From the IMG/VR virus record IMGVR_UViG_3300032782_000001, positions 372,001 through 436,000 of that record: DNA of 64,000 nt; one strand, given 5' to 3'. The translations under genes and the position numbers were made by a program. Shown piece by piece: positions 1,380 to 59,457 of this stretch. The notes under the pieces are model-generated. The model did not search any database. It was not told the DNA's origin and saw nothing but the letters and a program-made list of their open reading frames with translations. Each line of letters opens with the position of its first letter. Position 1 is the stretch's first letter.

Positions 1380-2204
1380 TCAGAGAAGTCGGAATTTGTC
1401 TTTAATATCAGATACGAGAGTTGTGAACTTAGACGTTGCTGTAATACCAGGATGCCATGCTAAGTCCATTGCTGCAAGGTCATACTGAAAACGGATCTTG
1501 GATCCCGGGATAGGGGTTCCTGACCCATCTCGATCACGACCAATCAACCATAACGTATCTGCGATCGCAGATACAGCAGTGATGTCATGAGCCACGACAA
1601 AAATCGTGTTGCGTTCGTCCATTAACGCAACTTGAGAAATGAGATCGCAAGTCTTGTCCTTCATGAGAGGATCGAGACCCGTGAATGGCTCATCCATCAC
1701 AATGAAATGTTCACTACACAATAATTGTTGGATAATAGCGACGCGCTGCCGTTGACCACCTGAGAGTTGAGAAGGATACTCCGAAGCCTTCTCTGTGAGT
1801 CCAAACCGTTCCAGCATTTCCAAAGACCGATCTCGGGCCTTCCCATCCTGATCATGTTGTGAAGCTGCAACCAAAAGATTCCCTAGAACAGTTCGATGAC
1901 GGAGAAGCGGATAATTTTGAGCTACTACCCCAACCAACCCAGCTTCGACAAGAATACTTTTTCCATCACCATTATTGATGGTTACGCTTCCCGATGTGGG
2001 AGCTTGAAGACCAGACATGATTCGTGAAAGTTGGGTCTTCCCGATGCCAGAAGGCCCAAGGATGCCTACAATCTGCCCTTGTGTGCAGCCAGGCCGAACG
2101 ATATCTCGAACTTCGGCTTTGACATTTTGTAATATCTGCTTATCTCCGAATTTCAAGCAGATATCATTGACGGAGACCAAAACATCTTTGATTTCGTAAT
2201 CCAT
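1380..2204 (-). CDS. ABC transporter ATP-binding subunit (NitT/TauT-like)
   Basis: Walker A GPSGIGKT, signature LSGGQRQR, Walker B IVMDEPF, switch VVAHD. Confidence 0.93.
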   Translation of the reverse strand: MDYEIKDVLVSVNDICLKFGDKQILQNVKAEVRDIVRPGCTQGQIVGILGPSGIGKTQLSRIMSGLQAPTSGSVTINNGDGKSILVEAGLVGVVAQNYPLLRHRTVLGNLLVAASQHDQDGKARDRSLEMLERFGLTEKASEYPSQLSGGQRQRVAIIQQLLCSEHFIVMDEPFTGLDPLMKDKTCDLISQVALMDERNTIFVVAHDITAVSAIADTLWLIGRDRDGSGTPIPGSKIRFQYDLAAMDLAWHPGITATSKFTTLVSDIKDKFRLL

Positions 2205-2216
2205 TTGTATCTCAAT

Positions 2217-2996
2217 TCATTGACGTTCCCACGTCAGTTCAGAATATGGGCAAAGTATTCGTTTGAGCCAAGCAATGCCCCAGTCTTGGAAGATTCCGAC
2301 AGCCAGCACGGTGAGTTGGAGAGCAGCAATAGATGCCAGGTGAAAATGCTTATTCTGATTGAGGAGCATGGTTCCGATGCCGCCTTCGGATCTACTAATG
2401 CCTTCCACCATCGTTAGCATCATCCATCCCATTGCCGCATTCTGTCTGAGGACTTCGAGCGAATAATCAGCACGCCCAAGTATCACGACTTCTAGAATCG
2501 CCCGCCATTCACCCATACGGAGGGTTCGAGCATGGTCGAATTCTTCTCTCGGAATACTAGCAACGACTTCCGCCATTGAAGTCATGAAGAACGTGCTCAT
2601 CCCGAAGACGAGCAGAGACACTTTAAGCCAGTGGCCAGCACCGAACATAAGGGTGAACAGCACAACAAACCCGGTCATCCCGAAGAAACGGGCTTTAGAA
2701 AATGCGGCTACGATAGGCCGCATCGCGGGAAGAACCGTCAGATACGCCATGCCGATGGAGAGAACAGAAGATATGATGAGCGCTTGAAGATTTGTCATGA
2801 AGCTCGAGTAAAGCTCGTAGACGAGACCGTCGTTGCGAAACATCTCCACCCACGCGCTCGCTACTTGAGCCGGCCTCGGGATGAGCTCAGAAGGATAGAA
2901 ACTCCATACGAGCAAAGCGAGCCCGACTTGGAATAGAACGATGAACAGAATGACCCGACTCGATACGGGTCTATTTGGGCGGAACGCGTCAATCAT
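2217..2996 (-). CDS. ABC transporter permease (NitT/TauT-like)
   Basis: Several hydrophobic segments; EAA-like loop EEFDHARTLRMG; LTMVEGISRSEGGIG resembles the SsuC/TauC-type motif; adjacent to the ATPase. Confidence 0.85.
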   Translation of the reverse strand: MIDAFRPNRPVSSRVILFIVLFQVGLALLVWSFYPSELIPRPAQVASAWVEMFRNDGLVYELYSSFMTNLQALIISSVLSIGMAYLTVLPAMRPIVAAFSKARFFGMTGFVVLFTLMFGAGHWLKVSLLVFGMSTFFMTSMAEVVASIPREEFDHARTLRMGEWRAILEVVILGRADYSLEVLRQNAAMGWMMLTMVEGISRSEGGIGTMLLNQNKHFHLASIAALQLTVLAVGIFQDWGIAWLKRILCPYSELTWERQ

Positions 2997-4795
2997 CAGT
3001 TCGACGTGCCGAGAACGATGACCACGCGACGATTCTTCGAACGACCGTCTTCGTTTGCATTGGATGCCACCGGGTCATTCTGACCATGCGGGACAACAGT
3101 GAAGCGGGAATCCGGAAAATTCGTACTGGATTGCTTCTCGAGCCACACCTTGACGGCGTTAGCACGCGCCTGGGAGAGCTTCATATTGTTACCAGGATCT
3201 CCGGTGTTGTCAGTGTGACCATGGATCTCAATAGCGAGCTCGTCGGCCACAAGAAGACCGTTCTTAAGTTGCTGGAGCTGGACCTGAGCACTGGGATCGA
3301 ATGAAGCAGAGCCCGTTTGGAAATTGATGCTCCAATTCCTCTTCGACACAACTTTGGTAACGGGACCGCCGGTGAATTTCGGCATGTCTGCCGTGGCAAC
3401 AGCTGCCGTAGTGGAGATCTTTGGCTTAATAGCCTTCACGAACGAGAGATTCAGAATATCATCCACCTTAGGATAGTTCGGAACCAGCTTCGGATATTGC
3501 TGAACGACGATATCACCAAACACAGTGTACGTCGCTGCAAAAACATTCGCAGACCCCTCTGATAGACCAAAGAGTTCCTCGAGGTCAGCGTAATTGCTGG
3601 CATAGGAACCACCAAGATTCACCTGGACACCAGTCTTGTCCGCTTCTGTAGCGCCTTTGTAATATTTCTCCCAGTATGCCGCGTCCTTCTCTTTATAGAC
3701 CTCCGCAGAAATCTTGGCTGCATGAGAAAGAGCAGCCGGGAAGGACCTGACTTGATCACCACCTTCGCAAATAGCGGCCAGCATACCGATGATTTCATCC
3801 TTGTTGGCAGCATCCCACTTGCGGATGCCAATGATGGCTGACGGCATTTGACTCCGGTATTCCCTGGTCGAGACAATAGATACGAGTCCACCTTTGTTTT
3901 GGGCAACATTCACATCGCCGGGAGTCCAAGTAACAACGGCATTGACACAAACGTGTTTCTTCTCACCTGTGAGCTTGCCGTTTTGCACGACCTTGCGATC
4001 CTCACAGGCCCCAGTAATGTACTTCTGACCTGCTTCAATGAAGTCCGTAGCGTTGACCCAATTGAGTGCGTCTGGGTCCCACGTAGTTTCATCCGGGTTA
4101 TTCTTGATACCGTTGTCACCAGCCCACTTCATGGCGATATTCCAATCACCATCACGAATAACGCCGGCCACCAAGCCGCCAACTGATACTTTCGGGTGGT
4201 CCCTCCAGTCAGCAGGTCCCATGAATTTATCTTCTCCGCGAGAGTATCCGGTAGATCCAATAATTTCGGCTTGATACTCCTTGCCGATCTTGGAAAGCTC
4301 AGCATTGACGCCAGCAAGGAATGCTGCAGTCCCATCACCCATCAAAACGAGGAAATGAACCCCCTGCGTGGGTTGAGCATTGGATTTAAGTCCATTGGCA
4401 AAAGCCATGAGGCTGGCTGTCATCTTATTCGTATCATCTTCGCGGATAATGGATAAGTTCACCTTGTGCTGATCCATCAGCGAACCTTCGGTAGTGCTGG
4501 CACCACCATTGGCGAACAACATACCCATTTGCGAGTTCCAAGCCATGACTTGCATGCGGATCTCGGGAGCTGAAGACTTTGCCACCTTGGTGCCGGGCAG
4601 TTGGACAGGTGACGATGCCACGATCGTATTCGAACTGCCGACCTGAGGAAGGTCGGCAATTTTCGGGACCTCGGATTTAGTAGACGGAGGGCCGATCAGA
4701 CCGCGGTCTGCCGCGCATTTGAACCCGGCCACGAGACCGGCAAAGATGGAAGCTGCGAGGATGACGCGTGGCAGGGTCTTGATCTTGGTGGACAT
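2996..4795 (-). CDS. ABC substrate-binding protein fused to a C-terminal OmpA-like peptidoglycan-binding domain
   Basis: N-terminal TM/signal segment; central periplasmic-binding-protein-like region; C-terminal INFQTGSASF...IEIHGHTDNTGDPGNNMKLSQARANAVK...GRSKNRRV (OmpA-C motifs). Confidence 0.85.
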   Translation of the reverse strand: MSTKIKTLPRVILAASIFAGLVAGFKCAADRGLIGPPSTKSEVPKIADLPQVGSSNTIVASSPVQLPGTKVAKSSAPEIRMQVMAWNSQMGMLFANGGASTTEGSLMDQHKVNLSIIREDDTNKMTASLMAFANGLKSNAQPTQGVHFLVLMGDGTAAFLAGVNAELSKIGKEYQAEIIGSTGYSRGEDKFMGPADWRDHPKVSVGGLVAGVIRDGDWNIAMKWAGDNGIKNNPDETTWDPDALNWVNATDFIEAGQKYITGACEDRKVVQNGKLTGEKKHVCVNAVVTWTPGDVNVAQNKGGLVSIVSTREYRSQMPSAIIGIRKWDAANKDEIIGMLAAICEGGDQVRSFPAALSHAAKISAEVYKEKDAAYWEKYYKGATEADKTGVQVNLGGSYASNYADLEELFGLSEGSANVFAATYTVFGDIVVQQYPKLVPNYPKVDDILNLSFVKAIKPKISTTAAVATADMPKFTGGPVTKVVSKRNWSINFQTGSASFDPSAQVQLQQLKNGLLVADELAIEIHGHTDNTGDPGNNMKLSQARANAVKVWLEKQSSTNFPDSRFTVVPHGQNDPVASNANEDGRSKNRRVVIVLGTSN

Positions 4796-4823
4796 ATGGT
4801 CTCCGTATTGGTCTCCGTATTAT

Positions 4824-5864
4824 TTATCGCTTGGATTTCGGGGAGTCAAAGAGATCCGAAAAAGAACTAGCTTCTGCGGACTCAGCTTCAGATTCAGCTT
4901 GGATTTCTTGAGGGTCGGAAGTGGACTGGATACGAACCTTGTTCGAAGACTGTTCGGAAGGAGAGATCAAAAGCTTGTCAGCCTTCTTCTCCCATTCTTC
5001 GAACTGATCCAGAGCATCTTGCTCATACACTCCGTTCTCGAGATCCATAGTCTTAATGAATCCTTCGGACATATCCATGAAGAGTTCGATCTCTCCAATC
5101 TTCATGGCGTAGTCATCAGCCAAGTGTTCCATGGCTTGATCAAACATTGCGCGCTGATCACCTTCACCTTGAAGAATTTTCCGTGCTGAAGTGAAGGCCC
5201 CGTAACTCGCCTTAATGGCCGCACGCTCCTGCGTTTTGACTTCAATCTCACCTTCAATATCCTGAACCGTGAATTGTGAAACCTCATAATATTTCTTCAT
5301 CGCCTTCGACATAGCTTGCATCTTATTGTAAAGAGCCTGCAAGGTAATGTTGGACTTCTGAAGCCGTCCAGCTTGCCGTGACTGCAGGATAAAAGCAGGT
5401 TTCATATCCGCTTTATCATGAGCTTGCTTGGCGATTTGAAGAGAATGAAGTCGATTGGCTTCGTTCTTGTCGATGATCCCCTTGAGTTTAACCATTTGGC
5501 CATTGAGACTGGCCATAGATTTCCTCATATCGTCAAGGCGCTTGTTAAGATCTTCTGCATATCCCTTTAGGATACCGATAGGATCAATTTCAATGATCAA
5601 CCCCGTGATGAATCGCATCAAAGACTTCCAGCCGTAGGAAGCCAAGGTTCGAATGCGCTTGTCCGATACCAAGAACACCAAAAATGCGATTGCAGCTGCA
5701 AGAGCTGCAGCATGCAGCGTGTTTGTCAACAGGATGACGATGAAAGGAAGAGCGACGTAAAGCCCCCATCCGAGTGCTCCAAGTAAGAGAGCCAAGAAGA
5801 GAATACTGGTCTTGCCTTCGGGGCGTTGGAAGAATGTCTTATTCTCAGGAGTGGTCATGATCAC
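4824..5864 (-). CDS. Two-TM membrane protein with a long PspA/IM30-like coiled coil
   Basis: Two N-terminal hydrophobic helices, then EIDPIGILKGYAEDLNKRLDDMRKS (resembles the PspA N-terminal DP..L....DM pattern) and heptad-rich helices. Confidence 0.55.
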   Translation of the reverse strand: MIMTTPENKTFFQRPEGKTSILFLALLLGALGWGLYVALPFIVILLTNTLHAAALAAAIAFLVFLVSDKRIRTLASYGWKSLMRFITGLIIEIDPIGILKGYAEDLNKRLDDMRKSMASLNGQMVKLKGIIDKNEANRLHSLQIAKQAHDKADMKPAFILQSRQAGRLQKSNITLQALYNKMQAMSKAMKKYYEVSQFTVQDIEGEIEVKTQERAAIKASYGAFTSARKILQGEGDQRAMFDQAMEHLADDYAMKIGEIELFMDMSEGFIKTMDLENGVYEQDALDQFEEWEKKADKLLISPSEQSSNKVRIQSTSDPQEIQAESEAESAEASSFSDLFDSPKSKR

Positions 5865-6532
5865 ACCTTCCCGAAGGTGGCAAGTTTGTTCCGCCTATCA
5901 GTGAGTTGAGCATGGACAACTTGATACGCTGCCACGAATCCTTCCTTCACTGAAGTAATTTTCTGCTCATCAGCAGTCAGCGCGGCCGATTCTGCATCTC
6001 GTTGTTCCGACAAGCGCGAAATATCGGATTGAAGTTGCTGAATTTGCTCGTGTTTGGTTTTAATCTGAGTATCGAGTGACTCTATGGTCGCTTGACGACC
6101 ACCGACCTTGCGCTTGAGCTGCGCTTGAGTCTCGTCTTCGAATTCGCGGCCCTTCTGTTCGAGGATGCCGATGCATTTATCAAAATCACCAAGAAGAATT
6201 TCGACAGAATGGCCGTGTTTGGCCGCAAGCTTCATAGCGGCCTTCCAACGCGCCGATTCATCAGGAATCGAGTCTGCAAGAGTAGAAAGAGTGTCTTGAA
6301 GTTCCACATATCCGGGAGGAGCCGAAGACTCGATAGCAGCTTCAAGACGCTTCCGAGCTGCTCCATCATCAACAGAATGAATAATGGCGGGATGGGATTC
6401 TACATGTTGAGGCGCAGGAGTACCTGTCGGCGCTTCCGGATGTCCTTCCGGGACTTCTTCAACGAATGCTCCTTTGACAGAAGCCCAAATACTCTTTTTC
6501 TCACCCTTTCCAACAGGTTGGTCCATGTCCAT
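5861..6532 (-). CDS. Coiled-coil protein, first gene of the ABC/PspA-like operon
   Basis: Stop overlaps the next start (ATGA); heptad-rich C-terminal half; GAGGA RBS before the ATG. Confidence 0.7.
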   Translation of the reverse strand: MDMDQPVGKGEKKSIWASVKGAFVEEVPEGHPEAPTGTPAPQHVESHPAIIHSVDDGAARKRLEAAIESSAPPGYVELQDTLSTLADSIPDESARWKAAMKLAAKHGHSVEILLGDFDKCIGILEQKGREFEDETQAQLKRKVGGRQATIESLDTQIKTKHEQIQQLQSDISRLSEQRDAESAALTADEQKITSVKEGFVAAYQVVHAQLTDRRNKLATFGKV

Positions 6533-6589
6533 ATCCTCGATCGAACGTTTGCTCGTCCGAGGGACACATTACACCAACGTTCTCGGCAT

Positions 6590-6799
6590 TTACGTGTGCA
6601 TAATATTCCGAACCAGTGATAAATTGCAGTCGTCAATCAGATTGTGAAGTTTTTTGGAATGATTCCATGCCTGGTCAAATGTCTTATGAACAAGAACATA
6701 CCAAACCCATTGGTCGCCACAGTTGGGACACGAACAGAGGGTTCTAGTTTGAATAAGAACGAAAAACTCCCACTCGTGGGGTACTATTTTTGAAGGCAC
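6590..6799 (-). CDS. Small hypothetical protein with CSCPNC
   Basis: 69-aa ORF co-oriented with neighbours; Cys cluster. Confidence 0.35.
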   Translation of the reverse strand: MPSKIVPHEWEFFVLIQTRTLCSCPNCGDQWVWYVLVHKTFDQAWNHSKKLHNLIDDCNLSLVRNIMHT

Positions 6800-7281
6800 T
6801 TGGCAATCTCAACCAAACCTTCGTTCCACTGACCATTCCTCTCCGCCACTTCTGGGAATTCTTGTACTTCCGGGGGCCGGATACTCCACTTCATTTCTCC
6901 CGTCTTTTCGTCTTCTACGCCCACACATCGGGTCAAAAGATGATCAATGAGAGCAACCCGTTGATTCGGATTGAGGGGATTCCAAACATCAAGCGCAACT
7001 TCGAGAACGAAATCCGTTTGAACAAGGTGTTCAAACTTGCCGGACATCTTATAGACATTCCCGGCAACAGGATTTCCTCCGCGCTTGGAAGCTTTGCTAC
7101 GGCAAATATATCGGAATCTGGCATGAGCAAGCTCCGGATGGAATTTCGGAATAAGTTTGGAAGCAATCTGTTCTGCTGCTTCTGAATCACCAAACAGAAC
7201 TTTTTCCGGTACTTTCCGTTCCCGCTTGGAGCGGACTGCATCATTTTCATTCCCACTGTTCACGCTATTCACATGCGACAT
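6784..7281 (-). CDS. Putative phage metallopeptidase-like protein with a degenerate HExxH
   Basis: Start moved to ATG 7281 after GAGGG. DFVLEVALDVWNPLNPNQRVALIDHLLTRC and ...PPEVQEFPEVAERNG match the family pattern, whose usual HELxH reads HLLTR here. Confidence 0.6.
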   Translation of the reverse strand: MSHVNSVNSGNENDAVRSKRERKVPEKVLFGDSEAAEQIASKLIPKFHPELAHARFRYICRSKASKRGGNPVAGNVYKMSGKFEHLVQTDFVLEVALDVWNPLNPNQRVALIDHLLTRCVGVEDEKTGEMKWSIRPPEVQEFPEVAERNGQWNEGLVEIAKCLQK

Positions 7282-7288
7282 TTTTCCC

Positions 7289-8095
7289 TCACGCAGCAAG
7301 ACGGAACCGACGAGCAAATCCACTGTCTCCGACCTTTTTCCAAAGATCTCCCGGGTCCTTGTCTTTTGGACCAAGACACGGATATTTTACGTCGACCACA
7401 CTGTCGAAAAACGAACCATGGTGTTGAATAAAGTCACGGACACCTTTCCGTCCAGCTGAATCCATGTCTAAGCATAATACGACACGCTTCACGAACCTAC
7501 GTAAAAAACGTACTTGAGCGATGCTGGGGGAGCTCGTAGTAATCCCAATCACATTTGGAACTACAAGTCGTTCAATAATGAGATGGTCCCCAGGACCTTC
7601 TACGAGCCAAGCTTCTTTAGAAGACCAAATAGAACTAATACTGGAAGTAATTCCGAAGAAATAACCTTCTGGCCTACGTGAGACCATGAAACTGTCGTAA
7701 CTCTTCTCCGCGAGAGACCGAAGTTGGAAGCCAATGGCTGCTCCCGTGTAACTCGTCAGAGGGAATACAACATGATTCAAAATCCGGCGCCCTACAAACT
7801 GTTGCTTGGGAGCCCCATCTTCGACAATCTCCCATTTAGATGACCACCGTCGATATCGACAACTATCACACCACGCATGAGAAGAATCTCTATCGGAACA
7901 AATGGTTCCATGTCCAGGATTTTTGGACGGGTCTACATCAAATTCTCCGATGGTATACCCGAGACGATGCCTAGTCCATTGATCAGCACTAATTCCACGA
8001 CCTCGAAGATACTCTTGAGCTTCTTCACTTTGAAGAAGTCCTTGGTGGGACCAGTCAAGGAAATCGTCAACGAAGCTCAAGACAAAATAGGACAA
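7289..8095 (-). CDS. dnaG: DnaG-like DNA primase catalytic/TOPRIM domain without an N-terminal Zn-binding domain
   Basis: AQEYLRGRGIS...RLGY; VVFPLTSYTGAAIGFQLRSL; WLVEGPGD; LCLDMDSAGRKG (TOPRIM DxD); KDKDPGDL. Confidence 0.85.
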   Translation of the reverse strand: MSYFVLSFVDDFLDWSHQGLLQSEEAQEYLRGRGISADQWTRHRLGYTIGEFDVDPSKNPGHGTICSDRDSSHAWCDSCRYRRWSSKWEIVEDGAPKQQFVGRRILNHVVFPLTSYTGAAIGFQLRSLAEKSYDSFMVSRRPEGYFFGITSSISSIWSSKEAWLVEGPGDHLIIERLVVPNVIGITTSSPSIAQVRFLRRFVKRVVLCLDMDSAGRKGVRDFIQHHGSFFDSVVDVKYPCLGPKDKDPGDLWKKVGDSGFARRFRLAA

Positions 8096-30829: not shown

Positions 30830-32017
30830 ATGCAAGATGGGAAGCTCAATATTCTGCTGGATTGCTTCTGGGGTTCTAGCGGAAAGGGCAAAACGTCCGC
30901 CTTCTTGGCGGATAGATTCAACGTCACTCACGTCTCCAGCTCCAACTTCCCGAATGCTGGTCACACCGCTCTGTTTGAAGACGGAACGAAGTTCGTTGCA
31001 AAAGCCATCCCGACGGCTGCCATCCTCAAGAAAGTGAAAGGAATGGGGATGGAATGCTGGATTACTCCTGGTTCTGGATTCTCATGGGGCCAACTTTGTA
31101 AGGAATGGAAAGAAGCTGGATATCCCGAAATTCGAATCCATGAGCGTGCGAGCATCGTTACAGACGATCACGCTAAGCGGGAACGTGAAGGTGCGGATTC
31201 AACCATGCATATTGCATCCACAATGCAAGGTTCGGCCGCAGCCATCGTAGATAAAATCCTTCGACGAGCTGACTGCAAACTCGCTTGGAATGATCATGAA
31301 GAAATGAAGAGGCAGTTTAGTCATCTCTTCGAAAGCAAGACAGCACGATCCTCAGATTCAATTTCTGTGATCCGGGCGGACGAATTCCGCAAGTGCGTCC
31401 AGGAAACTGTGATGACAAGGGGCCACATGTGGCTCCACGAGGGATCGCAAGGTTATGCTCTCTCTATCGATCACGGATCGCACTATCCACAATGCACTTC
31501 ACGTAATTGCACTGTGCAAGCGGCGCTCGATCACCTCGCAATGCCGCCACGATCTCTGGGAGATGTTTACCTCAATTTGAGGACGTTCCCCATTCGAGTT
31601 GGAAACGTTATGGGAGATGACGGGCAACAGAAGGGGTACTCCGGTGACTTCTATCCGGACTGTGAAGAAATGACTTGGGAACAGGTCGCTTCTGAATCTG
31701 GAATGCCTGCCGAAGAAGCCAAAGCGCTTGCTGAAAGAGAACGTACGACTGTGACCAAGCGTATCCGTCGCGTTTGTACTTTTTCGTTCATCGGACTCCG
31801 AGACGCAGTCGTGACCAATGGAGCCACGAAGCTCGTTCTCAATTTCGTCCAATATCTAGATTGGAATGATCATGGATTGCGCGGCGGAAAAGAAGCCTTC
31901 GAGAAGCTCTCCAAGAAGAGCAGGAAATTCATCGATAAAATCGAAGCCACCACCAATGTTCCTGTAGTCCTCATCGGAACCGGTGCGGCACACGAAGACA
32001 TGATCAGTCTGTTATAA
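30830..32017 (+). CDS. purZ: PurZ-type adenylosuccinate synthetase homologue (N6-succino-2-amino-dAMP synthetase candidate)
   Basis: WGSSGKGK (Ser in place of the PurA catalytic Asp of GDEGKGK), FPNAGHT, IASTMQG, HEGSQGY, YPQCTSRN, RTFPIRVGN, ERTTVTKRIRRV, LNFVQY in place of TKLD. Confidence 0.8.
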   Translation: MQDGKLNILLDCFWGSSGKGKTSAFLADRFNVTHVSSSNFPNAGHTALFEDGTKFVAKAIPTAAILKKVKGMGMECWITPGSGFSWGQLCKEWKEAGYPEIRIHERASIVTDDHAKREREGADSTMHIASTMQGSAAAIVDKILRRADCKLAWNDHEEMKRQFSHLFESKTARSSDSISVIRADEFRKCVQETVMTRGHMWLHEGSQGYALSIDHGSHYPQCTSRNCTVQAALDHLAMPPRSLGDVYLNLRTFPIRVGNVMGDDGQQKGYSGDFYPDCEEMTWEQVASESGMPAEEAKALAERERTTVTKRIRRVCTFSFIGLRDAVVTNGATKLVLNFVQYLDWNDHGLRGGKEAFEKLSKKSRKFIDKIEATTNVPVVLIGTGAAHEDMISLL

Positions 32018-42527: not shown

Positions 42528-43640
42528 ATGATCACGATTCTGGACATAGGCTGGGGAACGTATAAACAATATGAAGGGCCCTTTTTCAGGGGGGTCATTC
42601 CTTATTCTCTCGGGGCCACATATACGGAAGATCAACGGACGATGGCAGTTATCACCGCCACGGAAGGTGGACATTACGATGCCATTAACATGTATGATAG
42701 ATGCATTCTTTCCTCTGGTCTGATTCAATGGTGTGAAGCTGGTCAATTTTCAGTTTCGGATATGCTTGGAGCCGTGGCAGAAATGGATTCTTCTGCATTG
42801 GCTCCTTTGACTCAGTATTTGACGAGTATTGGCTTGAGCTTCAAGAAGAATGACAAAGGCAGGTGGCGATTCTTCTTCCCCGACGCACGAGGGGAAGTAG
42901 ACAGGCTGGATGAACAACAACAACTCTTCCTGTTCAAGTCCAATGGACAGCAGGGGACTTGGGACGATTCTTCTAAAGAATATGCTAAAGGTTGGGCTGC
43001 TGCCGTCGCCAGCGTATTCCAAAGTACGATCGCTCAGCAAGCTCAAATCCGGTATACGATCCCAAGGCTCATGGGATTTGTCTTGCCTCAAGCAATGACT
43101 ACGCTATGGGGAACCGAATCTGGTACTCCTACTGGCCCAGGGGACTGGAGAGCTGCCGCTAGAGCCGCATATTTGTCGTTTGCTGCAAATAACCCGACTT
43201 ATGCAAACCAATCATTGCAGTCATACGTATCGGAAGCTGGAGCGGCGCAATGGAATTCAGATTGGGTTGTAGGTATGTTACAAGCTCTGACCTTTGATCC
43301 TGGAGTCATCATTTATCCCGCCAGATATGATGCCATCAGGCCCGTGATCGAGAAGCTCTACGGCGTAGATCTTCCTGATTTTGATCAAGAATTGAAGGAT
43401 TGGCATGATGGCAATGCCAATCGTGTTCCCGGTTATCCTCCGTCAGGAATGCATACGACGAAAGAAATTCAGCAAGCTCTCATCAAGCTCGGATTTGATA
43501 TTGGTCCAACGGGGGCTGACGGTCAGTATGGTCCAAAAACTAAGGATGCCGTTATGGTGTTTCAGAAACTCCACGGACTCAAGGCCGACGGTATTGTTGG
43601 GGTAAATACCTGCGCGGCCCTGTTCGCATTGTCGTCATGA
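42528..43640 (+). CDS. Putative endolysin: lysozyme-like N-terminus plus C-terminal peptidoglycan-binding domain
   Basis: ITATEGGHYDAINMYD...SSGLIQW; C-terminal IQQALIKLGFDIGPTGADGQYGPKTKDAVMVFQKLHGLKADGIVG (PG_binding_1). Confidence 0.75.
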   Translation: MITILDIGWGTYKQYEGPFFRGVIPYSLGATYTEDQRTMAVITATEGGHYDAINMYDRCILSSGLIQWCEAGQFSVSDMLGAVAEMDSSALAPLTQYLTSIGLSFKKNDKGRWRFFFPDARGEVDRLDEQQQLFLFKSNGQQGTWDDSSKEYAKGWAAAVASVFQSTIAQQAQIRYTIPRLMGFVLPQAMTTLWGTESGTPTGPGDWRAAARAAYLSFAANNPTYANQSLQSYVSEAGAAQWNSDWVVGMLQALTFDPGVIIYPARYDAIRPVIEKLYGVDLPDFDQELKDWHDGNANRVPGYPPSGMHTTKEIQQALIKLGFDIGPTGADGQYGPKTKDAVMVFQKLHGLKADGIVGVNTCAALFALSS

Positions 43641-54927: not shown

Positions 54928-56455
54928 CGCCAACCCATGGGCAAACGTACGTCCGATTGCCTTCGATCTTCCAACCTGGGAGAGGATTGATTTTGAAGTG
55001 GAAGAACTGAGAAGCGCTAATCTTCTTCCATGAATTTGACTTCGCGTGTTTCCCGCATGTGGGAATATAGAGGCGAGCTTTGGACCAAAACATTGTCGCA
55101 TGATTGGAACACTTGACGCATTTCCAAATGACGACAGTGACTTCCTTGTCATTGGACTCTTGGACTACAGCCTTTCGTCCTTTGTGGTTACCGGCTAAGA
55201 CCAATACGATATCACCAGGTTCCAAAGCAAATTGCGGAAAGCTGCTGTACGCTTCTCGCATGATCGCAGATGACTTTTCGTAGTCATTGCGTTTAATCAA
55301 TGATTCCAGAGACGAACGACGCTGCTTCGCCAGCTTCGCGACAGCCCGATGGATCAGTTTAATGTCGCGAACATGCTCGGCGAGTTTCTTGCGATTGACC
55401 GCCATTTCTTCATGGCGCCGTTTCGCTTCTTGTTCCCGTCGTTCCCGTTTCTCTTGAAGAGCCCGATTTCGCTTATCCTTCCGAAGTTTTTCTGCTTCCA
55501 GCTTCTCCTGATGTTTCTTAGTTGCTTCTTCAGCCCTTTGCCGGCCGGAATTGTGCCAATCTTCCCAGGCTTCTTGGAGACCTTTTTCGAAGTCGCTAAT
55601 GAATAGCTCGGGTCGATGCCCCCAATTTGGGATCCGACCGCCCGGGATGGAGGCGTACAAATTCAACAGTCTATTTTTCTTGGAGGAATTGCGAATGAAT
55701 TGGAGGCTATACACTAAATGTTGACGTACGCGTTCTGCAGATCCTCCTTCACCTTGAGTGGCTTCAGACTTAATCGGCGGACATTTATTCAACGACCGCC
55801 CAGCCTCCGCGTATGTCATCGGCTCTCCGAAGAACCCGAAACATGCGAGCAGGCAATACCACTGCCGTGTAGTAAGAAGCTTCAAGACGCCGCGAATAGT
55901 GTTAATGGTGCGGAGAACATCTTTCGGGTGAACATCTAGAGAATGTTCATTTCCGCAATCTACTACACGGCAATGATATGACAAATTATCGTGAACGAAT
56001 GGAAGCTTCTTGTTGGCAATTTCTGGCCAAATTTCTTCCGGGATTTGACCGAGACCTTCAGCAAGCCGCTTGGCGGAGGCCTTCCAATCACCTCGCTTGT
56101 CATCCCATGGACTTTCACGACCGTGTTCATAAGAAGAGATAACGTCGTTCGGTAGTTCGGTTAGTCGAGAGACGGATGTGATACTGTCGTGCCCTAAACT
56201 ATTGCGCAATTGGAAAATGCGATTGCGTTTATGAGATGACTTGGAAGGCGGTTCTCCTCGGATTTTGAGAGGATGGATAGCAACCGATGTGTCCATCCCC
56301 GATTCCACTCGACGTACGAACCTGTCGGCTGACACTCCGAAGATGAATTCGACGTCTTCGGCCGTCATCTTCTCGCCAAACACTTCCCAATTGCGAGTGT
56401 TAAGCGTTCGATCGCAGCCGATTGGCTCTTCGGACGGCTTGTCCTCGGAGTTCAT
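54920..56455 (-). CDS. Multidomain regulator: XRE-like HTH, sigma-4-like HTH, coiled coil, KOW-like and Cys/His motifs
   Basis: SITSVSRLTELPNDVISSYEHG; LTTRQWYCLLACFG...MTYAEAGRSL...SAERVRQ; LEPGDIVLVLAGNHKGRKAVV; CVKC...CGKH. Confidence 0.6.
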   Translation of the reverse strand: MNSEDKPSEEPIGCDRTLNTRNWEVFGEKMTAEDVEFIFGVSADRFVRRVESGMDTSVAIHPLKIRGEPPSKSSHKRNRIFQLRNSLGHDSITSVSRLTELPNDVISSYEHGRESPWDDKRGDWKASAKRLAEGLGQIPEEIWPEIANKKLPFVHDNLSYHCRVVDCGNEHSLDVHPKDVLRTINTIRGVLKLLTTRQWYCLLACFGFFGEPMTYAEAGRSLNKCPPIKSEATQGEGGSAERVRQHLVYSLQFIRNSSKKNRLLNLYASIPGGRIPNWGHRPELFISDFEKGLQEAWEDWHNSGRQRAEEATKKHQEKLEAEKLRKDKRNRALQEKRERREQEAKRRHEEMAVNRKKLAEHVRDIKLIHRAVAKLAKQRRSSLESLIKRNDYEKSSAIMREAYSSFPQFALEPGDIVLVLAGNHKGRKAVVQESNDKEVTVVIWKCVKCSNHATMFWSKARLYIPTCGKHAKSNSWKKISASQFFHFKINPLPGWKIEGNRTYVCPWVGDE

Positions 56456-56555
56456 TCAACCAAGTACACCCCCGATTGGAGAATTTAGGACTCCATGACA
56501 GATCGCACGCGCATAAACTACGAACCGGAAGCCTTCATCGGCTGTACCTTGCCAC

Positions 56556-57275
56556 ATGGAAACCTTCCGAGGTCGCCCATTGACCGAGACTGAAATTCAA
56601 TGGCGAACCGAAGGCCGATGCATTGGATGCGGAGCTCCCGCCCGGAAAGTCAAAATGAAAGACGGGACCATTCGCCCTGATATGGAATGCAAAGATTGCT
56701 ACGGATCCAGGAATTCATACCCTTCCGGAGGCAATTCATTCCGTGAGTTCGGTGCTTCTCGAGCATCTGTTGGACATGAATATCGATCCCGGCTTGGTTA
56801 CTCTTCCCGAGCCGGCGGAGCCCCACGACAACCCGGAGAAGAAACTGCCACCCAGAAAACCGAAGTTTGGTTGTCTACCCCGGAGCCCAAACTCCTTCCC
56901 TCACCAGAACCGCCCTTCCAAATCACCCCCTCCAGGGTAAAAATCGTGCATATGCGGTGGTCTGGAATGTCTATCGCCGACATCGCACATGAACTTCGTC
57001 TATGGGTGCCAAACGTCCGACATGTTCTTCAGAAACTTCGAGCCTCTAAAAGTACCATCCCAGACTGGGCCCAAGACTGGTTAAGGCAGGAAGTTTATAG
57101 CCGAGATCAACCCGACCATCTGACCCGCAAACATGAAGAAACCCTTCAACACACCATCTCCCAACTTCTCAGCCGCGGCATCCCAAAAGTAGTCATCCTG
57201 GAAACCCTCGGACTCCATTCGGAACGCGACGCGTCCCTCATGGAACCCTGCGGTTGCTTCTCCGACCAAACATAA
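56556..57275 (+). CDS. Zn-finger plus HTH protein
   Basis: CIGC...CKDC; IVHMRWSGMSIADIAHELRLWVPNVRHVLQKL. Confidence 0.65.
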   Translation: METFRGRPLTETEIQWRTEGRCIGCGAPARKVKMKDGTIRPDMECKDCYGSRNSYPSGGNSFREFGASRASVGHEYRSRLGYSSRAGGAPRQPGEETATQKTEVWLSTPEPKLLPSPEPPFQITPSRVKIVHMRWSGMSIADIAHELRLWVPNVRHVLQKLRASKSTIPDWAQDWLRQEVYSRDQPDHLTRKHEETLQHTISQLLSRGIPKVVILETLGLHSERDASLMEPCGCFSDQT

Positions 57276-57431
57276 GATCGTTCAATTACCCCGAACGACG
57301 TTCCGAACCAGGCACTACCCCCTAGAAAAGGGATCGTCCACGCAAAAATCGAACGAATACTTTGAAGCGCTCAGGGACCCAATTTTCCCTGTGCATGAAC
57401 TTCCCCATCCAAAAAGATTTACCTCGTCACT

Positions 57432-57498
57432 CCCTCCCCCTCTCCCCTATCCCATACCCTCCCACCCCCATACTACTCCCCCTATCCCTATTTATCCC
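57432..57498. repeat. Pyrimidine/C-run low-complexity tract (G-runs on the minus strand)
   Basis: ccctccccctctcccctatcccataccctcccacccccatactactccccctatccctatttatccc: at least 10 runs of 3 or more C. Confidence 0.85.
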
Positions 57499-57842
57499 TA
57501 CTGGGTGGCCATGGGGGCGAGGGCCCGCATCTCCGGGATGTCGTAGTAGCAGACCGGCCCGTAGCAGTTCGGGGGCGTCGGCGCGGGGCGCCAGCTCCGG
57601 GCCGCGGCGGGCCTTTCCGCGCGCTTGGCGGTCGTCGGGCGGGTCTCGGGCCGCGGGAAGATCGGAGACGCTCCCGGGGCCACGTAGACGGCCGGAGCGA
57701 CCGGTTCGGGCTTCGGCGCTTCCTGGACGGGGGTCGGATCGGGCTGGCGCGTCCCGTAGATGCGCAGTTCGCCTTGGAAGAGCGAGGGGCCGAAGGCGTA
57801 GGCGGCGAGGCCGAGGACCAGCAGGACGAGGAACGTCTTCAT
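57498..57842 (-). CDS. Small secreted or membrane-anchored Pro/Ala-rich protein
   Basis: MKTFLVLLVLGLAAYAFG signal/TM; promoter motif 8 nt upstream. Confidence 0.75.
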   Translation of the reverse strand: MKTFLVLLVLGLAAYAFGPSLFQGELRIYGTRQPDPTPVQEAPKPEPVAPAVYVAPGASPIFPRPETRPTTAKRAERPAAARSWRPAPTPPNCYGPVCYYDIPEMRALAPMATQ

Positions 57843-57894
57843 ATCTCCGGATACGGCGGACGGGGCCGGACTTGTCGCCCGGCCCCGCGGCCCG

Positions 57895-58155
57895 TCACTC
57901 GGGCAGAACGGCCAGGGCGGCGCGGAAGAGGGCCGGGCGGCCGGTCATGAAGACCCAGGGCGCCCCGTCTTCCTCGTCGCCTTGACGGAACAGGGCGACG
58001 CAGGAGTTGCCCCGGGCGACGAGGCCAACCGCGTTCCCCTTGAGGTCAGGGCCGGCGTGCCCCTGGTTGACGTTGATCTTGGGGTCACCCGAGACCTTCA
58101 CTTGGTACTCGCGACCCGAGAACACGAACGAACCCTCGAAGGACCATTTGCTCAT
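57895..58155 (-). CDS. Small early-type hypothetical protein
   Basis: ATG 58155, 8 nt after the promoter motif; 86 aa. Confidence 0.7.
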   Translation of the reverse strand: MSKWSFEGSFVFSGREYQVKVSGDPKINVNQGHAGPDLKGNAVGLVARGNSCVALFRQGDEEDGAPWVFMTGRPALFRAALAVLPE

Positions 58156-58207
58156 GGGTTGCAATACGGCGAGGGCCGCCAGGTTTCCCCAGCGGCCCTC
58201 GGTCCGT

Positions 58208-58435
58208 CTAGCAGCGCTCCATGCGGCGCGCCCACCGCTCGTAGTCCTCGACCTGCTCCTCCGTCATCTTGGGGACGAGAGGAGTCCGGGAGCCAGACTC
58301 GTCCTCGTACTCGAGCGTGTCGCCGTGCGAGGCCATGTTCGGGCTGACGCATTGCCCGATGGGTGCGTGCTTGACGAGCCGGGTCAGGGGCTTGGCCGTG
58401 CGGTCTGCGTCGAGACGTGCCTTCTTCGTGTCCAT
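58208..58435 (-). CDS. Small hypothetical protein, paralogue of 60439-60627
   Basis: GGAGGTG RBS plus promoter motif; KARLDADRTAKP...VKHAPIGQCV...LEYEDE. Confidence 0.75.
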   Translation of the reverse strand: MDTKKARLDADRTAKPLTRLVKHAPIGQCVSPNMASHGDTLEYEDESGSRTPLVPKMTEEQVEDYERWARRMERC

Positions 58436-58506
58436 CGTCGTCACCTCCGACCTGGAATACGACAAGAGGGACCGGACTTGCGCCCGGTCCCCTGGGTCCT
58501 GGTGGG

Positions 58507-58725
58507 CTATTCGCCCTTGGCCGCTTTCCTTCCTGCTTCGGTGACCCTGATGTTGCCTTCCGCGTCCTCTTCGAGCATGCCGCGGCGCAGCAATGCTTCG
58601 TGCGTCACGATGTTCTGGTGGTGCGTCGGGCGTCGCATGCCGATCTTGGTCTTTTGACCCTTGTTGCTGTCTTCGACCCCGACGCACCATTTGAGATCTT
58701 CGAGCATCCGCTGGCTGAGCTTCAT
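58507..58725 (-). CDS. Small winged-helix-like hypothetical protein
   Basis: RBS plus promoter motif; EALLRRGMLE...IRVTEAGRKA. Confidence 0.7.
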   Translation of the reverse strand: MKLSQRMLEDLKWCVGVEDSNKGQKTKIGMRRPTHHQNIVTHEALLRRGMLEEDAEGNIRVTEAGRKAAKGE

Positions 58726-58774
58726 CCCGTCACCTCCGGGGCAGAATACGCCCCGGAGCGCGGAATTTGCGGCT

Positions 58775-59011
58775 TTAGGGCACTTCCATCCGGACGGTGA
58801 TTTGGTCGTCCTTCCCTTCCCATCCGTCCGGGTGCGCGTCGTAGAAGCCATCCCGGACTTCGAGGTTGCCCACGAGGACGCCCGACTCGTCCTGCTCGGT
58901 GTGGAATTCCCCGACCGCCGTATGCCACGCCACGATGTTCTTAGCGCGTCGGATCGCTTCGTCCGACGTCATGGTGTCCGGCTTCTCGATCCCGATGAAG
59001 ACCATTTCCAT
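58775..59011 (-). CDS. Small hypothetical protein
   Basis: RBS plus promoter motif; 78 aa. Confidence 0.7.
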   Translation of the reverse strand: MEMVFIGIEKPDTMTSDEAIRRAKNIVAWHTAVGEFHTEQDESGVLVGNLEVRDGFYDAHPDGWEGKDDQITVRMEVP

Positions 59012-59062
59012 CTCGTCACCTCCAGCCAGGAATACGGCCGGAGGTGCGAGATTTACAGGCCT

Positions 59063-59278
59063 TCAGGCTGCGAACCGGGTTGCTTCCTCGGCGAAGACCG
59101 AGAGAACGTCGGCCGCTTCCTCGAGTTCGGTCTCGAGGAAATCGACCTGTGCCTGGTTGTATTCCAAGTCCTCGTAGTCGGTGTAGCCCTCCGCGTCCGT
59201 GGACGCTGCGTGAGCCGCCTCGTACGCATCCCCGATGGCCATTCCGAGCAGCGAATCCCTGGCGATCACCTTCTCCAT
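59063..59278 (-). CDS. Small acidic hypothetical protein
   Basis: RBS plus promoter motif; ATG 59278. Confidence 0.7.
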   Translation of the reverse strand: MEKVIARDSLLGMAIGDAYEAAHAASTDAEGYTDYEDLEYNQAQVDFLETELEEAADVLSVFAEEATRFAA

Positions 59279-59364
59279 TGTCGTCACCTCCGACCAGGAA
59301 TACGACGGAGAACGCAGGATTTACAAGTCTGAAGCGGCGCGCGGCGGATTTCTGCTCTGCCCGG

Positions 59365-59436
59365 AGGATCCGGCGGGATTCGAACCCGCGACCATGGGGT
59401 TAAAAGCCCCTAGCTCTACCCCTGAGCTACGGATCC
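59365..59436 (-). tRNA. tRNA-Lys (anticodon UUU)
   Basis: Cloverleaf: acceptor GGATCCG/CGGATCC, D arm GCTC-AGGGGTA-GAGC, anticodon loop CT-TTT-AA, T arm GCGGG-TTCGAAT-CCCGC. One A-A mismatch at the top of the anticodon stem; no encoded CCA. Confidence 0.93.
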
Positions 59437-59438
59437 AA

Positions 59439-59454: not shown

Positions 59455-59457
59455 ATC

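What the first reader, a model, noticed from the sequence alone, without database searches (positions are those of the whole stretch)
1380..6532. Five-gene envelope operon: coiled coil, TM-PspA-like protein, SBP-OmpA fusion, permease, ABC ATPase
Seen: five tightly coupled genes (ATGA or 1-bp overlaps) on one strand. The binding protein carries both an N-terminal anchor and a C-terminal OmpA peptidoglycan-binding domain. The upstream protein has a PspA/IM30-like N-terminal motif after two TMs. Known: PspA/ESCRT-III proteins protect or remodel membranes; OmpA-C binds peptidoglycan. Inference: this is not a plain nutrient importer. It may be a phage-borne envelope-sensing or repair machine (membrane stabilisation, superinfection exclusion, or wall-fragment or nucleobase uptake).
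Basis: partly seen in the sequence, partly recalled or inferred. Interest (0 to 1): 0.7.

Follow-up and report, generated by a model that had tools for sequence, protein, structure and literature searches.

The report
Megaphage PspA-linked wall-tethered ABC transporter module
A 436-kb phage carries a conserved five-gene cassette that joins a membrane-anchored relative of the bacterial membrane-repair protein PspA, with its coiled-coil partner, to an ABC importer whose binding protein is tied to the cell wall; this kind of cassette is already described from genome comparisons but has never been tested.

Summary
Five co-directional, tightly packed minus-strand genes lie at 1380-6532, in the replication-gene block of a 436,316-bp phage genome with terminal repeats.

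- **4824-5864 is a divergent PspA/ESCRT-III protein.** It sits behind an N-terminal two-helix membrane hairpin. Pfam misses it, but its family profile aligns end to end with Pfam-positive bacterial PspAs (HHalign 95%, E 2e-8). The AF2 model's best solved-structure matches are Vipp1.
- **5861-6532 is a coiled-coil partner.** It is homologous to the gene that precedes PspA in the bacterial versions.
- **The other three genes form an ABC importer.** They encode an NMT1/THI5-type binding protein fused to an OmpA peptidoglycan-binding domain, a permease and an intact ATPase.
- **The five genes travel together.** 36 of 41 evaluable IMG/VR loci have this layout, as do Lak phage and LR756500.

Acidobacteriota, Myxococcota and Armatimonadota carry a longer version that adds a membrane-anchored Snf7 and an AAA+ ATPase. 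That bacterial operon was described in 2024 (PMC11237479). PspA next to ABC transporters in huge phages was reported in an October 2026 preprint.

Function and ligand remain untested.

The parts
6533..6783 (-). 251-bp intergenic leader upstream of the first gene. A terminator-like hairpin (6766-6782) follows the stop of the upstream metallopeptidase gene, and the leader is the presumed promoter region of the module.
   Evidence: Sequence read; hairpin listed; upstream gene is PF18894 phage metallopeptidase. The promoter role is an inference; no convincing sigma-70 match was found.
5861..6532 (-). P0001, 223 aa: conserved coiled-coil partner of the PspA-like protein. It has a short N-terminal helix, a disordered linker, three short helices and one ~110-residue helix.
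   Evidence: AF2 model, pLDDT 87.1. Family found directly upstream of the PspA-like gene in 38 of 41 viral loci. HHalign with the bacterial gene that precedes PspA: 94.9%, E 4.7e-8. No PDB fold match; only uncharacterised AFDB clusters match.
4824..5864 (-). P0002, 346 aa: membrane-anchored divergent PspA/IM30 (ESCRT-III superfamily) protein. It has two N-terminal hydrophobic helices (about residues 19-67), then a PspA-like domain (residues 76-295) and an acidic, low-confidence tail.
   Evidence: The family has 1066 clusters at 50% identity.
2996..4795 (-). P0003, 599 aa: N-terminal signal peptide or signal anchor, a Pro/Ser-rich linker, an NMT1/THI5-like (NitT/TauT type) substrate-binding domain (about residues 60-470) and a C-terminal OmpA-like peptidoglycan-binding domain (492-589).
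   Evidence: PF00691 at 63.6 bits. The Atlas structure search gives TM 0.72-0.74 to NMT1+OmpA clusters. The Lak-B7 counterpart hits NMT1_2, NMT1 and OmpA above their cut-offs. The D529, N537, L540, R544, A545 motif is invariant in 37 homologues.
2217..2996 (-). P0004, 259 aa: ABC importer permease, type I, binding-protein-dependent family. One gene, so presumably a homodimer.
   Evidence: BPD_transp_1 at 18.4 bits, below cut-off; NCBIfam SaoP and NtrB weak; phrog_6743 E 7.5e-13; 31% identical to the LR756500 counterpart, E 1e-40; four or more hydrophobic segments.
1380..2204 (-). P0005, 274 aa: ABC ATPase with Walker A (GPSGIGKT), LSGGQ signature, Walker B plus Glu (FIVMDE) and H-loop all intact, followed by a conserved extension of about 50 residues at the C-terminus.
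   Evidence: Sequence; PF00005 at 89.8 bits; best NCBIfam matches are sulfate, phosphonate, sulfonate and taurine-type ATPases; 35% identical to the LR756500 counterpart including the C-terminal part.

Best explanation
**Shown.** The region is a phage-borne, five-gene, streamlined version of a conserved envelope cassette that links a PspA-family (ESCRT-III superfamily) protein to a peptidoglycan-tethered ABC importer. The gene order is:
1. a coiled-coil partner (P0001);
2. a PspA-like protein anchored in the inner membrane by an N-terminal helical hairpin (P0002);
3. an NMT1/THI5-type binding protein fused to an OmpA-like wall-binding domain (P0003);
4. a permease (P0004);
5. an ATPase (P0005).

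The bacterial versions (Acidobacteriota, Myxococcota, Armatimonadota) use a soluble PspA and add a membrane-anchored Snf7-like protein and a two-domain AAA+ ATPase. The phage version lacks both.

**Inferred mechanism.**
- The module is expressed with the replication genes around it and inserts into the host inner membrane.
- Positive residues flank both ends of the P0002 hairpin, so its PspA domain should face the cytoplasm. There, with P0001, it would polymerise on and stabilise or reshape the inner leaflet, preserving membrane integrity and proton-motive force during the long megaphage infection.
- On the periplasmic side, the OmpA domain would fix the binding protein, and so the transporter, to the wall. 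The ATPase would drive uptake of a small, still unknown solute.

Whether the two halves touch physically, or only act at the same time, is not known.
For: **Phage context**
- The record is a 436,316-bp virus genome with terminal repeats.
- The flanking genes are a clamp loader, a phage metallopeptidase, a primase, a PD-(D/E)XK nuclease and a RecD-like helicase.
- Ribonucleotide reductase and an endolysin-like protein lie elsewhere in the window.

**PspA assignment of P0002**
- The AF2 model has a helix pattern of 56, 77, 36 and 18 residues, which to my knowledge resembles PspA/Vipp1 helices 1 to 5.
- Foldseek PDB ranks 1-7 are all Vipp1 (E 4e-3, TM by target 0.31-0.58).
- PspA, LiaH, YjfJ and VIPP1 appear in the AFDB Swiss-Prot search.
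- VIA-align gives rmsd 2.0-3.8 A over 122-156 residues to PspA and Vipp1.
- 7 of 56 family members hit PF04012, the most frequent family among them.
- HHalign against bacterial PspAs gives 95.3%, E 2.3e-8 over 204 columns. Cross-family controls gave 1-45%.

**Partner P0001**
- HHalign with the bacterial gene that precedes PspA gives 94.9%.

**Synteny**
- The same module is present in LR756500, a 620-kb contig and Lak-B7.
- In IMG/VR it is present with the dyad directly upstream in 36 of 41 evaluable loci.
- A 133-kb contig flanked by bacterial-looking genes carries it too.
- Bacterial operons have the partner, PspA, SBP-OmpA, permease, ATPase, a 300-330-aa protein and an AAA+ ATPase. This matches the operon listed in PMC11237479.

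**Transporter**
-.
Against: - P0002 itself gives no PF04012 hit, even at E <= 1.
- Fold matches to long helical hairpins are unspecific. BAR and I-BAR domains score as high or higher with VIA-align (Z 11-12 against 10.3-10.8), and the Foldseek E-values are only about 1e-2.
- The permease match to BPD_transp_1 is below Pfam's cut-off.
- The binding domain has no sequence relative among solved structures, so the ligand is unknown.
- Every functional statement rests on genomic context. No RNA data were found.
- The phage module lacks the AAA+ ATPase that the bacterial systems presumably use for turnover.
Confidence: 0.6

Rival explanations
1. It is a plain auxiliary nutrient importer (NitT/TauT-type uptake of, for example, a sulfonate, nitrate, bicarbonate or pyrimidine precursor). 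The two upstream coiled-coil genes would be unrelated neighbours.
For: The ATPase, permease and NMT1-like binding domain are ordinary importer parts. The ATPase matches phrog_293, a family filed under auxiliary metabolic genes. The module sits among nucleotide-metabolism genes.
Against: The dyad sits directly upstream in 36 of 41 viral loci across binding-protein identities down to about 36%. Bacterial operons keep a PspA and the partner next to the same transporter. The binding protein always carries a wall anchor, which is unusual for a freely diffusing nutrient receptor.
Confidence: 0.12
2. It is a conflict or lysis-related module: superinfection exclusion, an anti-defence device, or control of lysis timing through membrane sealing.
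For: PspA-type proteins counteract membrane lesions (established knowledge of the Psp response). The OmpA-like domain resembles the MotB-type part of the Zorya ZorB models. P0001 gives a faint hit to the Rz-like LysB model (E 0.042).
Against: PADLOC gives only generic domain hits, and the LysB hit is not significant. The endolysin-like gene is 37 kb away (42528-43640). The same cassette sits in bacterial chromosomes beside housekeeping genes. ABC importers are not part of known lysis cassettes (own knowledge).
Confidence: 0.12
3. P0002 is not an ESCRT-III/PspA relative but a generic membrane-anchored coiled-coil or BAR-like protein. The PspA signal would be coiled-coil compositional noise.
For: BAR and I-BAR domains and axonemal coiled coils top the VIA-align list. 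Pfam gives no PspA hit for P0002. Iterated profiles of coiled coils can drift.
Against: - The un-iterated family HMM already hits bacterial Pfam-positive PspAs at E down to 6e-6.
- HHalign is end to end (residues 76-295 against 11-224) at 95%, while four other coiled-coil families from the same loci score 1-45%.
- PF04012 is the commonest Pfam hit among family members.
- P0002 occupies the same operon slot as PspA in the bacterial versions.
Confidence: 0.1
4. The region is bacterial DNA wrongly joined to a phage contig.
For: The binding protein is 54-58% identical to Acidobacteriota proteins.
Against: G+C here (0.47-0.51) matches most of the window. Phage replication genes flank it on the same strand with 20-nt spacing. 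The same module is found in many independent huge-phage assemblies, including the Lak-B7 record, deposited as a complete genome. The window's protein falls in an all-viral clade.
Confidence: 0.02

Closest known systems
Bacterial PspA / PBPB-OmpA / permease / ABC-ATPase / TM-Snf7 / double-AAA+ operons (Ravi et al., mSystems 2024, PMC11237479; example OGG56892.1)
   Same: An unnamed gene is followed by PspA, then a signal-bearing binding protein fused to OmpA, then a permease and an ABC ATPase, in the same order. The phage proteins are homologous to each of these five.
   Different: The phage PspA carries its own N-terminal membrane hairpin. The membrane-anchored Snf7-like gene and the AAA+ gene are absent from the module and from 40 of 41 viral loci. 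Only a generic 498-aa classical AAA+ is encoded about 60 kb away.
Huge-phage PspA loci next to complete ABC transporters (Yuan and Chen, bioRxiv 10.64898/2026.10.24.761521)
   Same: The preprint reports 189 PspA genes in 184 huge phages. Fifteen of them lie next to a binding protein, a permease and an ATPase, and are read as membrane-stress management.
   Different: I could not check whether those 15 loci are this family, because no supplement is held. In the passages I read, the preprint does not mention the OmpA fusion, the membrane hairpin on PspA or the conserved coiled-coil partner. My survey finds at least 39 IMG/VR loci of this one type.
PspA (E. coli), Vipp1/IM30 (cyanobacteria, plastids), LiaH (Bacillus)
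   Same: The helical hairpin architecture and the overall domain length are shared. The solved or predicted structures of these proteins are among the best matches.
   Different: To my knowledge these proteins are soluble or peripheral and bind membranes through an amphipathic helix 0. P0002 is integral through two transmembrane helices. It scores below Pfam detection, has family motifs of its own (RPEGK near the N-terminus, IDPIG at 93-97, invariant D274) and an acidic tail.
NitT/TauT-family ABC importers with NMT1/THI5-type binding proteins (for example TauABC, SsuABC, NrtABCD, ThiXYZ)
   Same: One permease, one ATPase and one NMT1-fold receptor. The ATPase's best NCBIfam matches include the aliphatic-sulfonate, taurine and nitrate ATPases of this family, alongside sulfate, phosphonate and other importer ATPases.
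   Different: The receptor is fused to an OmpA-like wall anchor and is too divergent for Pfam NMT1 or any solved structure by sequence. The substrate is unknown.
OmpA-like peptidoglycan anchors on inner-membrane machines (MotB/PomB, TssL, YiaD, Pal)
   Same: The C-terminal domain matches these at E 1e-10 to 1e-25. The conserved Asp/Arg motif is, to my knowledge, the one that binds peptidoglycan.
   Different: Here the anchor is attached to a solute receptor rather than to a stator, a secretion-system part or a lipoprotein.

Membership tests
PspA/IM30 family (Pfam PF04012; ESCRT-III superfamily), for P0002 | Match to the curated family model above its cut-off (33.9 bits) | tested here: not met
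   No hit for P0002 at E <= 1. No PF04012 match anywhere in the phage genome, although the same search rings in 13 of 14 control genomes. 7 of 56 family members hit at E <= 0.01, best 3.2e-5.
PspA/IM30 family (Pfam PF04012; ESCRT-III superfamily), for P0002 | Profile-level homology over the whole domain to proteins that do pass the family model | tested here: met
   HHalign of 45 phage-type against 26 bacterial PspAs: 95.3%, E 2.3e-8, 204 columns, P0002 residues 76-295 against PspA 11-224. The bacterial set passes PF04012 at 71 and 56.7 bits. Controls gave 1-45%.
PspA/IM30 family (Pfam PF04012; ESCRT-III superfamily), for P0002 | Long helix 1 / helix 2+3 hairpin followed by helices 4 and 5 | tested here: met
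   The AF2 model has helices at 95-150, 155-231, 237-272 and 282-299, with pLDDT above 90 in the hairpin. Vipp1 takes Foldseek ranks 1-7. Rmsd is 2.0-3.8 A to Vipp1 and PspA. Caveat: BAR domains score equally well, so the fold alone does not discriminate.
PspA/IM30 family (Pfam PF04012; ESCRT-III superfamily), for P0002 | N-terminal amphipathic helix 0 that binds the membrane | tested here: inconclusive
   Helix 69-93 aligns with Vipp1 residues 2-23 (model 72-228 against chain 2-157), but it is preceded by two transmembrane helices. Its amphipathicity was not measured.
PspA/IM30 family (Pfam PF04012; ESCRT-III superfamily), for P0002 | Self-assembly into rings, rods or carpets, and membrane binding or remodelling | not testable with these tools
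   Needs purified protein, electron microscopy and liposome assays.
PspA-linked PBPB-OmpA ABC operon (PMC11237479) | PspA gene directly upstream of a signal-bearing binding protein fused to OmpA, followed by a permease and an ABC ATPase | tested here: met
   Window order; published operon string.
PspA-linked PBPB-OmpA ABC operon (PMC11237479) | Membrane-anchored divergent Snf7 protein in the operon | tested here: not met
   No homologue of the bacterial 300-330-aa protein in the phage genome; present in 1 of 41 viral loci against 48 of 57 bacterial loci. P0002 is not that protein (HHalign 3.5%).
PspA-linked PBPB-OmpA ABC operon (PMC11237479) | Two-domain classical AAA+ ATPase (N-terminal copy inactive) in the operon | tested here: not met
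   Absent from the module. The only genome hit is a 498-aa single-AAA protein about 60 kb away, 29% identical over the AAA core. Present in 1 of 41 viral loci.
Type I ABC importer, NitT/TauT family | ATPase with intact Walker A, Q-loop, LSGGQ, Walker B-Glu and H-loop | tested here: met
   Motifs read in the translation; PF00005 at 89.8 bits.
Type I ABC importer, NitT/TauT family | Permease of the binding-protein-dependent family (PF00528) | tested here: inconclusive
   18.4 bits against a cut-off of 26.4; SaoP 30.7 and NtrB 21.3 bits, far below their cut-offs. An EAA-like stretch (EEFDHARTLRMGEW) is seen by eye.
Type I ABC importer, NitT/TauT family | NMT1/THI5-fold periplasmic binding protein | tested here: met
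   The Atlas predicted-structure search gives TM 0.72-0.74 to NMT1+OmpA clusters. The Lak-B7 counterpart passes NMT1_2 and NMT1. P0003 itself has no Pfam NMT1 hit.
OmpA-like peptidoglycan-binding domain (PF00691) | Family model above its cut-off, with the conserved Asp and Arg of the wall-binding motif | tested here: met
   63.6 bits against a cut-off of 27.2. D529, N537, L540, R544 and A545 are invariant in 37 homologues. Actual binding was not tested.
Known anti-phage defence systems (PADLOC) | Match of the proteins to system-specific models | tested here: not met
   Only the generic OmpA-like part of ZorB and ABC-domain hits.

The most novel reading that the evidence does not exclude
The membrane-integrated PspA plus its coiled-coil partner would be a self-sufficient, AAA+-independent ESCRT-III-type machine that megaphages deploy to take over host inner-membrane maintenance. 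It would be physically docked to a wall-fixed ABC importer, so that membrane repair or remodelling and solute uptake are coupled at one envelope-spanning site.

The cassette may also have diversified mainly in huge phages and been passed to bacteria. In the binding-protein tree, 76 of the 77 bacterial sequences (plus one IMG/VR sequence) form one shallow clade nested among deep viral branches. That sampling is biased, however: only the best 80 of 318 bacterial hits were kept.
Probability: 0.15. Interest if true: 0.75.

Novelty: new member of a known kind. Interest (0 to 1): 0.5.

Why it matters
PspA/Vipp1 proteins are the bacterial branch of the ESCRT-III membrane-remodelling superfamily. How they are targeted and what they cooperate with is still largely open.

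This cassette offers a compact, naturally minimised version: five genes, with no AAA+ ATPase and no second ESCRT-III protein. The PspA is fixed in the membrane, and the cassette is genetically locked to a wall-tethered transporter. It is widespread in the largest known phages. The P0002 family alone has 1066 clusters at 50% identity, and Pfam's PspA model (PF04012) does not detect P0002 itself.

Such a small system could be rebuilt in the laboratory to test two questions. Does a phage stabilise its host's membrane during a long infection? Is membrane remodelling mechanistically coupled to solute transport, as comparative genomics proposed in 2024?

For annotation, it shows that counts of phage PspA genes made with the Pfam model alone would miss this subfamily.

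Tried and rejected
- **Pair prediction.** Complex prediction on P0002(68-320) with P0001(50-223) returned no verdict. It is not evidence either way.
- **Locus searches with P0002.** The search for related loci with the P0002 alignment had no stretch conserved enough, and the single-protein scan of IMG/VR found nothing. I reached the viral loci through the binding protein instead.
- I rebuilt it without that row.
- **P0002 against solved structures by sequence.** The profile gave only insignificant coiled-coil hits.
- **VIA-align on the P0002 model.** It did not separate PspA/Vipp1/Snf7 from BAR domains, so I rest the assignment on profile homology, not on fold alone.
- **P0001.** No Pfam, NCBIfam or PDB fold assignment. 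Only uncharacterised AFDB clusters matched. It is not detectably related to PspA (HHalign 32-45%).
- **Ligand of the binding protein.** Neither the single sequence nor a 17-sequence profile of residues 60-475 found any solved structure. One alignment attempt failed on a wrong reading frame.
- **Expression.** Only two DNA runs from wetland metagenomes hold the region, and no RNA run was found. I did not lay reads.
- **Defence-system membership.** PADLOC gave only generic domains.
- **P0002 as the bacterial membrane-anchored Snf7.** Rejected (HHalign 3.5%).
- **Promoter scan.** No convincing site upstream of the module.

Full report
**1. What is there**

The window is bases 372,001-436,000 of a 436,316-bp virus record with direct terminal repeats. 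On the minus strand, five ORFs occupy 6532 to 1380:

| Name | Coordinates | Length |
|---|---|---|
| P0001 | 5861-6532 | 223 aa |
| P0002 | 4824-5864 | 346 aa |
| P0003 | 2996-4795 | 599 aa |
| P0004 | 2217-2996 | 259 aa |
| P0005 | 1380-2204 | 274 aa |

The junctions are as follows:
- P0001/P0002: a GTGA overlap, or a 2-nt gap if P0002 starts at its nearby ATG.
- P0002/P0003: a 28-nt spacer holding a duplicated ATACGGAGACCA.
- P0003/P0004: a 1-bp TGATG overlap.
- P0004/P0005: a 12-nt spacer.

Upstream lies a 251-bp gap that begins with a terminator-like hairpin after a phage metallopeptidase gene. Downstream, a clamp-loader gene starts 20 nt after the ATPase stop.

The neighbourhood is a replication and nucleotide-metabolism block. 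It holds a primase, a PD-(D/E)XK nuclease, a RecD-like helicase, ribonucleotide reductase and thymidylate synthase. G+C of the module (0.47-0.51) matches most of the window.

**2. The transporter half**

P0005 is an ABC ATPase (PF00005, 89.8 bits). Walker A, LSGGQ, Walker B-Glu and the H-loop are all visible in the translation. Its best curated matches include sulfate, phosphonate, sulfonate and taurine ATPases.

P0004 is a multi-helix membrane protein. Its matches to the binding-protein-dependent permease family are weak and below cut-off.

P0003 has three parts:
- An N-terminal hydrophobic segment. I could not decide whether it is a cleaved signal peptide or an anchor, and there is no lipobox.
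- A domain of about 410 residues that Pfam does not recognise. The predicted structure held in the ESM Atlas matches NMT1/THI5 plus OmpA clusters at TM 0.72-0.74.
- An OmpA-like domain (63.6 bits). Its Asp/Arg wall-binding motif is invariant in 37 homologues.

The Lak-B7 counterpart passes Pfam NMT1_2, NMT1 and OmpA. That links this clade to ordinary NitT/TauT receptors. No solved structure is related by sequence to the binding domain, so the ligand cannot be inferred.

**3. The PspA half**

P0002 has no significant Pfam or NCBIfam hit, yet it belongs to a large family of 1066 clusters at 50% identity.

An AF2 model built on 56 family members (pLDDT 80.6) shows the following:
- two N-terminal hydrophobic helices;
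- a helix at 69-93;
- a 56 + 77-residue hairpin with pLDDT above 90;
- helices of 36 and 18 residues;
- a low-confidence acidic tail.

Fold comparisons point to PspA/Vipp1 but are not specific:
- Foldseek against the PDB puts seven Vipp1 entries first (E 4e-3 to 2e-2, TM by target 0.31-0.58).
- AFDB Swiss-Prot returns PspA, YjfJ, LiaH and VIPP1 among BAR-domain proteins.
- VIA-align does not separate them. BAR and I-BAR score Z 11-12, while PspA, Vipp1 and Snf7 score Z 10.3-10.8 at rmsd 2.0-3.8 A.

Because the fold is not specific, I tested homology by sequence profiles:
- PF04012 is the commonest Pfam hit among family members, 7 of 56.
- The un-iterated family HMM reaches bacterial Pfam-positive PspAs at E down to 6e-6.
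- HHalign between 45 phage-type proteins and 26 bacterial PspAs gives 95.3% and E 2.3e-8 over 204 columns. It aligns P0002 residues 76-295 with PspA residues 11-224.
- Four other helical families from the same loci serve as controls and score 1-45%.

Positive charges flank both ends of the hydrophobic hairpin, so the PspA domain should face the cytoplasm. This topology is an inference.

P0001 (AF2 pLDDT 87.1) has a short N-terminal helix, a disordered linker, a small helical head and one helix of about 110 residues. It has no match in the PDB. It is homologous (HHalign 94.9%, E 4.7e-8) to the unnamed gene that precedes PspA in the bacterial operons.

**4. Do the five genes belong together?**

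I fetched 48 IMG/VR loci and 80 bacterial loci through the binding protein. I classified all ORFs with profiles built from the window and from one Thermoanaerobaculia locus.

Of the 41 viral loci with enough upstream sequence:
- all 41 have the permease and the ATPase;
- 39 have the membrane-anchored PspA;
- 38 have the partner;
- 36 have the dyad directly upstream;
- only one has the Snf7-like gene or the AAA+ gene.

The module is also present in the following records:
- huge phage LR756500, whose trio is 31-35% identical;
- a 620-kb JGI contig;
- Prevotella phage Lak-B7;
- a 133-kb contig flanked by a hybrid sensor kinase and pyruvate formate-lyase genes, most likely a bacterial chromosome.

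Ralstonia phage RsoM2USA has only the dyad within 6 kb. The dyad is therefore the tighter unit.

In the bacteria sampled (Acidobacteriota, Myxococcota, Armatimonadota and others), the full form has seven genes: the partner, a soluble PspA, SBP-OmpA, a permease, an ATPase, a 300-330-aa protein and a 570-616-aa AAA+ ATPase.

**5. Comparison with what is known**

That seven-gene bacterial string is the one listed in the supplement of PMC11237479: X, PspA, SIG+PBPB+OmpA, TM permease, ABC-ATPase, SIG+TM+Snf7, and inactive-AAA+AAA. The authors proposed a link between ATP-dependent membrane remodelling and solute transport.

A preprint of October 2026 reports 189 PspA genes in huge phages, 15 of them beside complete ABC transporters.

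The window's locus is thus a member of a kind already noticed by comparative genomics. This analysis adds several points:
- The phage form is a fixed five-gene variant with a membrane-integrated PspA that Pfam misses.
- It has a conserved partner protein homologous to the bacterial 'X' gene.
- It lacks the Snf7-like and AAA+ components.
- It is common in megaphages.

**6. Mechanism**

Shown: composition, homology, synteny and intact ATPase motifs.

Inferred, following established PspA/Vipp1 biology: P0002 with P0001 coats or reshapes the cytoplasmic face of the host inner membrane and preserves its integrity during infection. Meanwhile the wall-fixed receptor feeds a small solute to the permease-ATPase pair.

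Physical coupling of the two halves is unproven. A pair prediction for P0001 and P0002 gave no verdict. No RNA data exist for the region.

Rivals are listed with their tests in the Rival explanations section:
- a plain importer;
- a conflict or lysis device;
- a non-ESCRT coiled coil;
- an assembly chimera.

None fits the conserved synteny as well.

**7. Evolution**

In a quick maximum-likelihood tree of 120 binding proteins, the window's protein lies in an all-viral clade of 8 (support 99). 76 of the 77 bacterial sequences, plus one IMG/VR sequence (L016), form one shallow clade (support 100) nested among deep viral branches.

Only the best 80 of 318 bacterial hits were kept, and the root is a midpoint. 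The direction of transfer is therefore open.

**8. Verdict**

The novelty is modest (a new member of a known, computationally defined kind), the interest is moderate, and function and ligand are untested.

Noticed in passing
window 30830-32017 (+): The best curated match is PurZ, the succino-amino-deoxyadenylate synthase of 2-aminoadenine (Z) DNA phages. NF038379 scores 198 bits, below its cut-off of 300 but above all PurA models; phrog_1211 gives E 5e-54. The phage may replace adenine in its DNA.
   Followed up: partly
window about 56000-64000: G+C rises to 0.58-0.66 against 0.45-0.51 in the rest of the window. The ORFs there overlap on both strands and have no PHROG or NCBIfam match. A tRNA-Lys(ttt) lies at 59363-59436 on the minus strand. 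This is the right end of the terminally repeated genome. It could be a foreign island or an assembly issue; I did not examine it.
   Followed up: no
own genome G000 313359-314855 (L135 871-2367), outside the window: A 498-aa classical AAA+ ATPase (PF00004, 112 bits), 29% identical over the AAA core to the AAA+ partner of the bacterial PspA-ABC operons. Whether it serves the PspA-like protein is unknown.
   Followed up: partly
window 4796-4823 (-): The 28-nt spacer between the PspA-like gene and the binding-protein gene is almost entirely a tandem 12-nt direct repeat, ATACGGAGACCA twice. Each copy carries a GGAG ribosome-binding-like core.
   Followed up: no
L002 (Ralstonia phage RsoM2USA, gp55-gp54), locus coordinates 5344-6909: This cultivated 344-kb phage carries the partner plus membrane-PspA dyad (E 6e-28 and 2e-71 to the family profiles). 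Both are annotated as hypothetical proteins, and no ABC trio lies within 6 kb. It could serve as an experimental entry point.
   Followed up: partly
L068 (MAG labelled Chitinimonas sp., 27.9-kb contig) and L016 (IMG/VR contig, 479 kb): L068 has the phage-type five-gene module and groups next to the viral clades, so it may be a phage contig binned into a bacterial MAG. L016 is filed as viral but has the bacterial gene order and sits inside the bacterial clade.
   Followed up: no
window 6784-7374 and 7289-8095 (-): The phage metallopeptidase ORF (PF18894) and the primase-like Toprim ORF overlap by 86 nt as listed from their longest TTG starts. The true start of the metallopeptidase gene is probably further in.
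   Followed up: no
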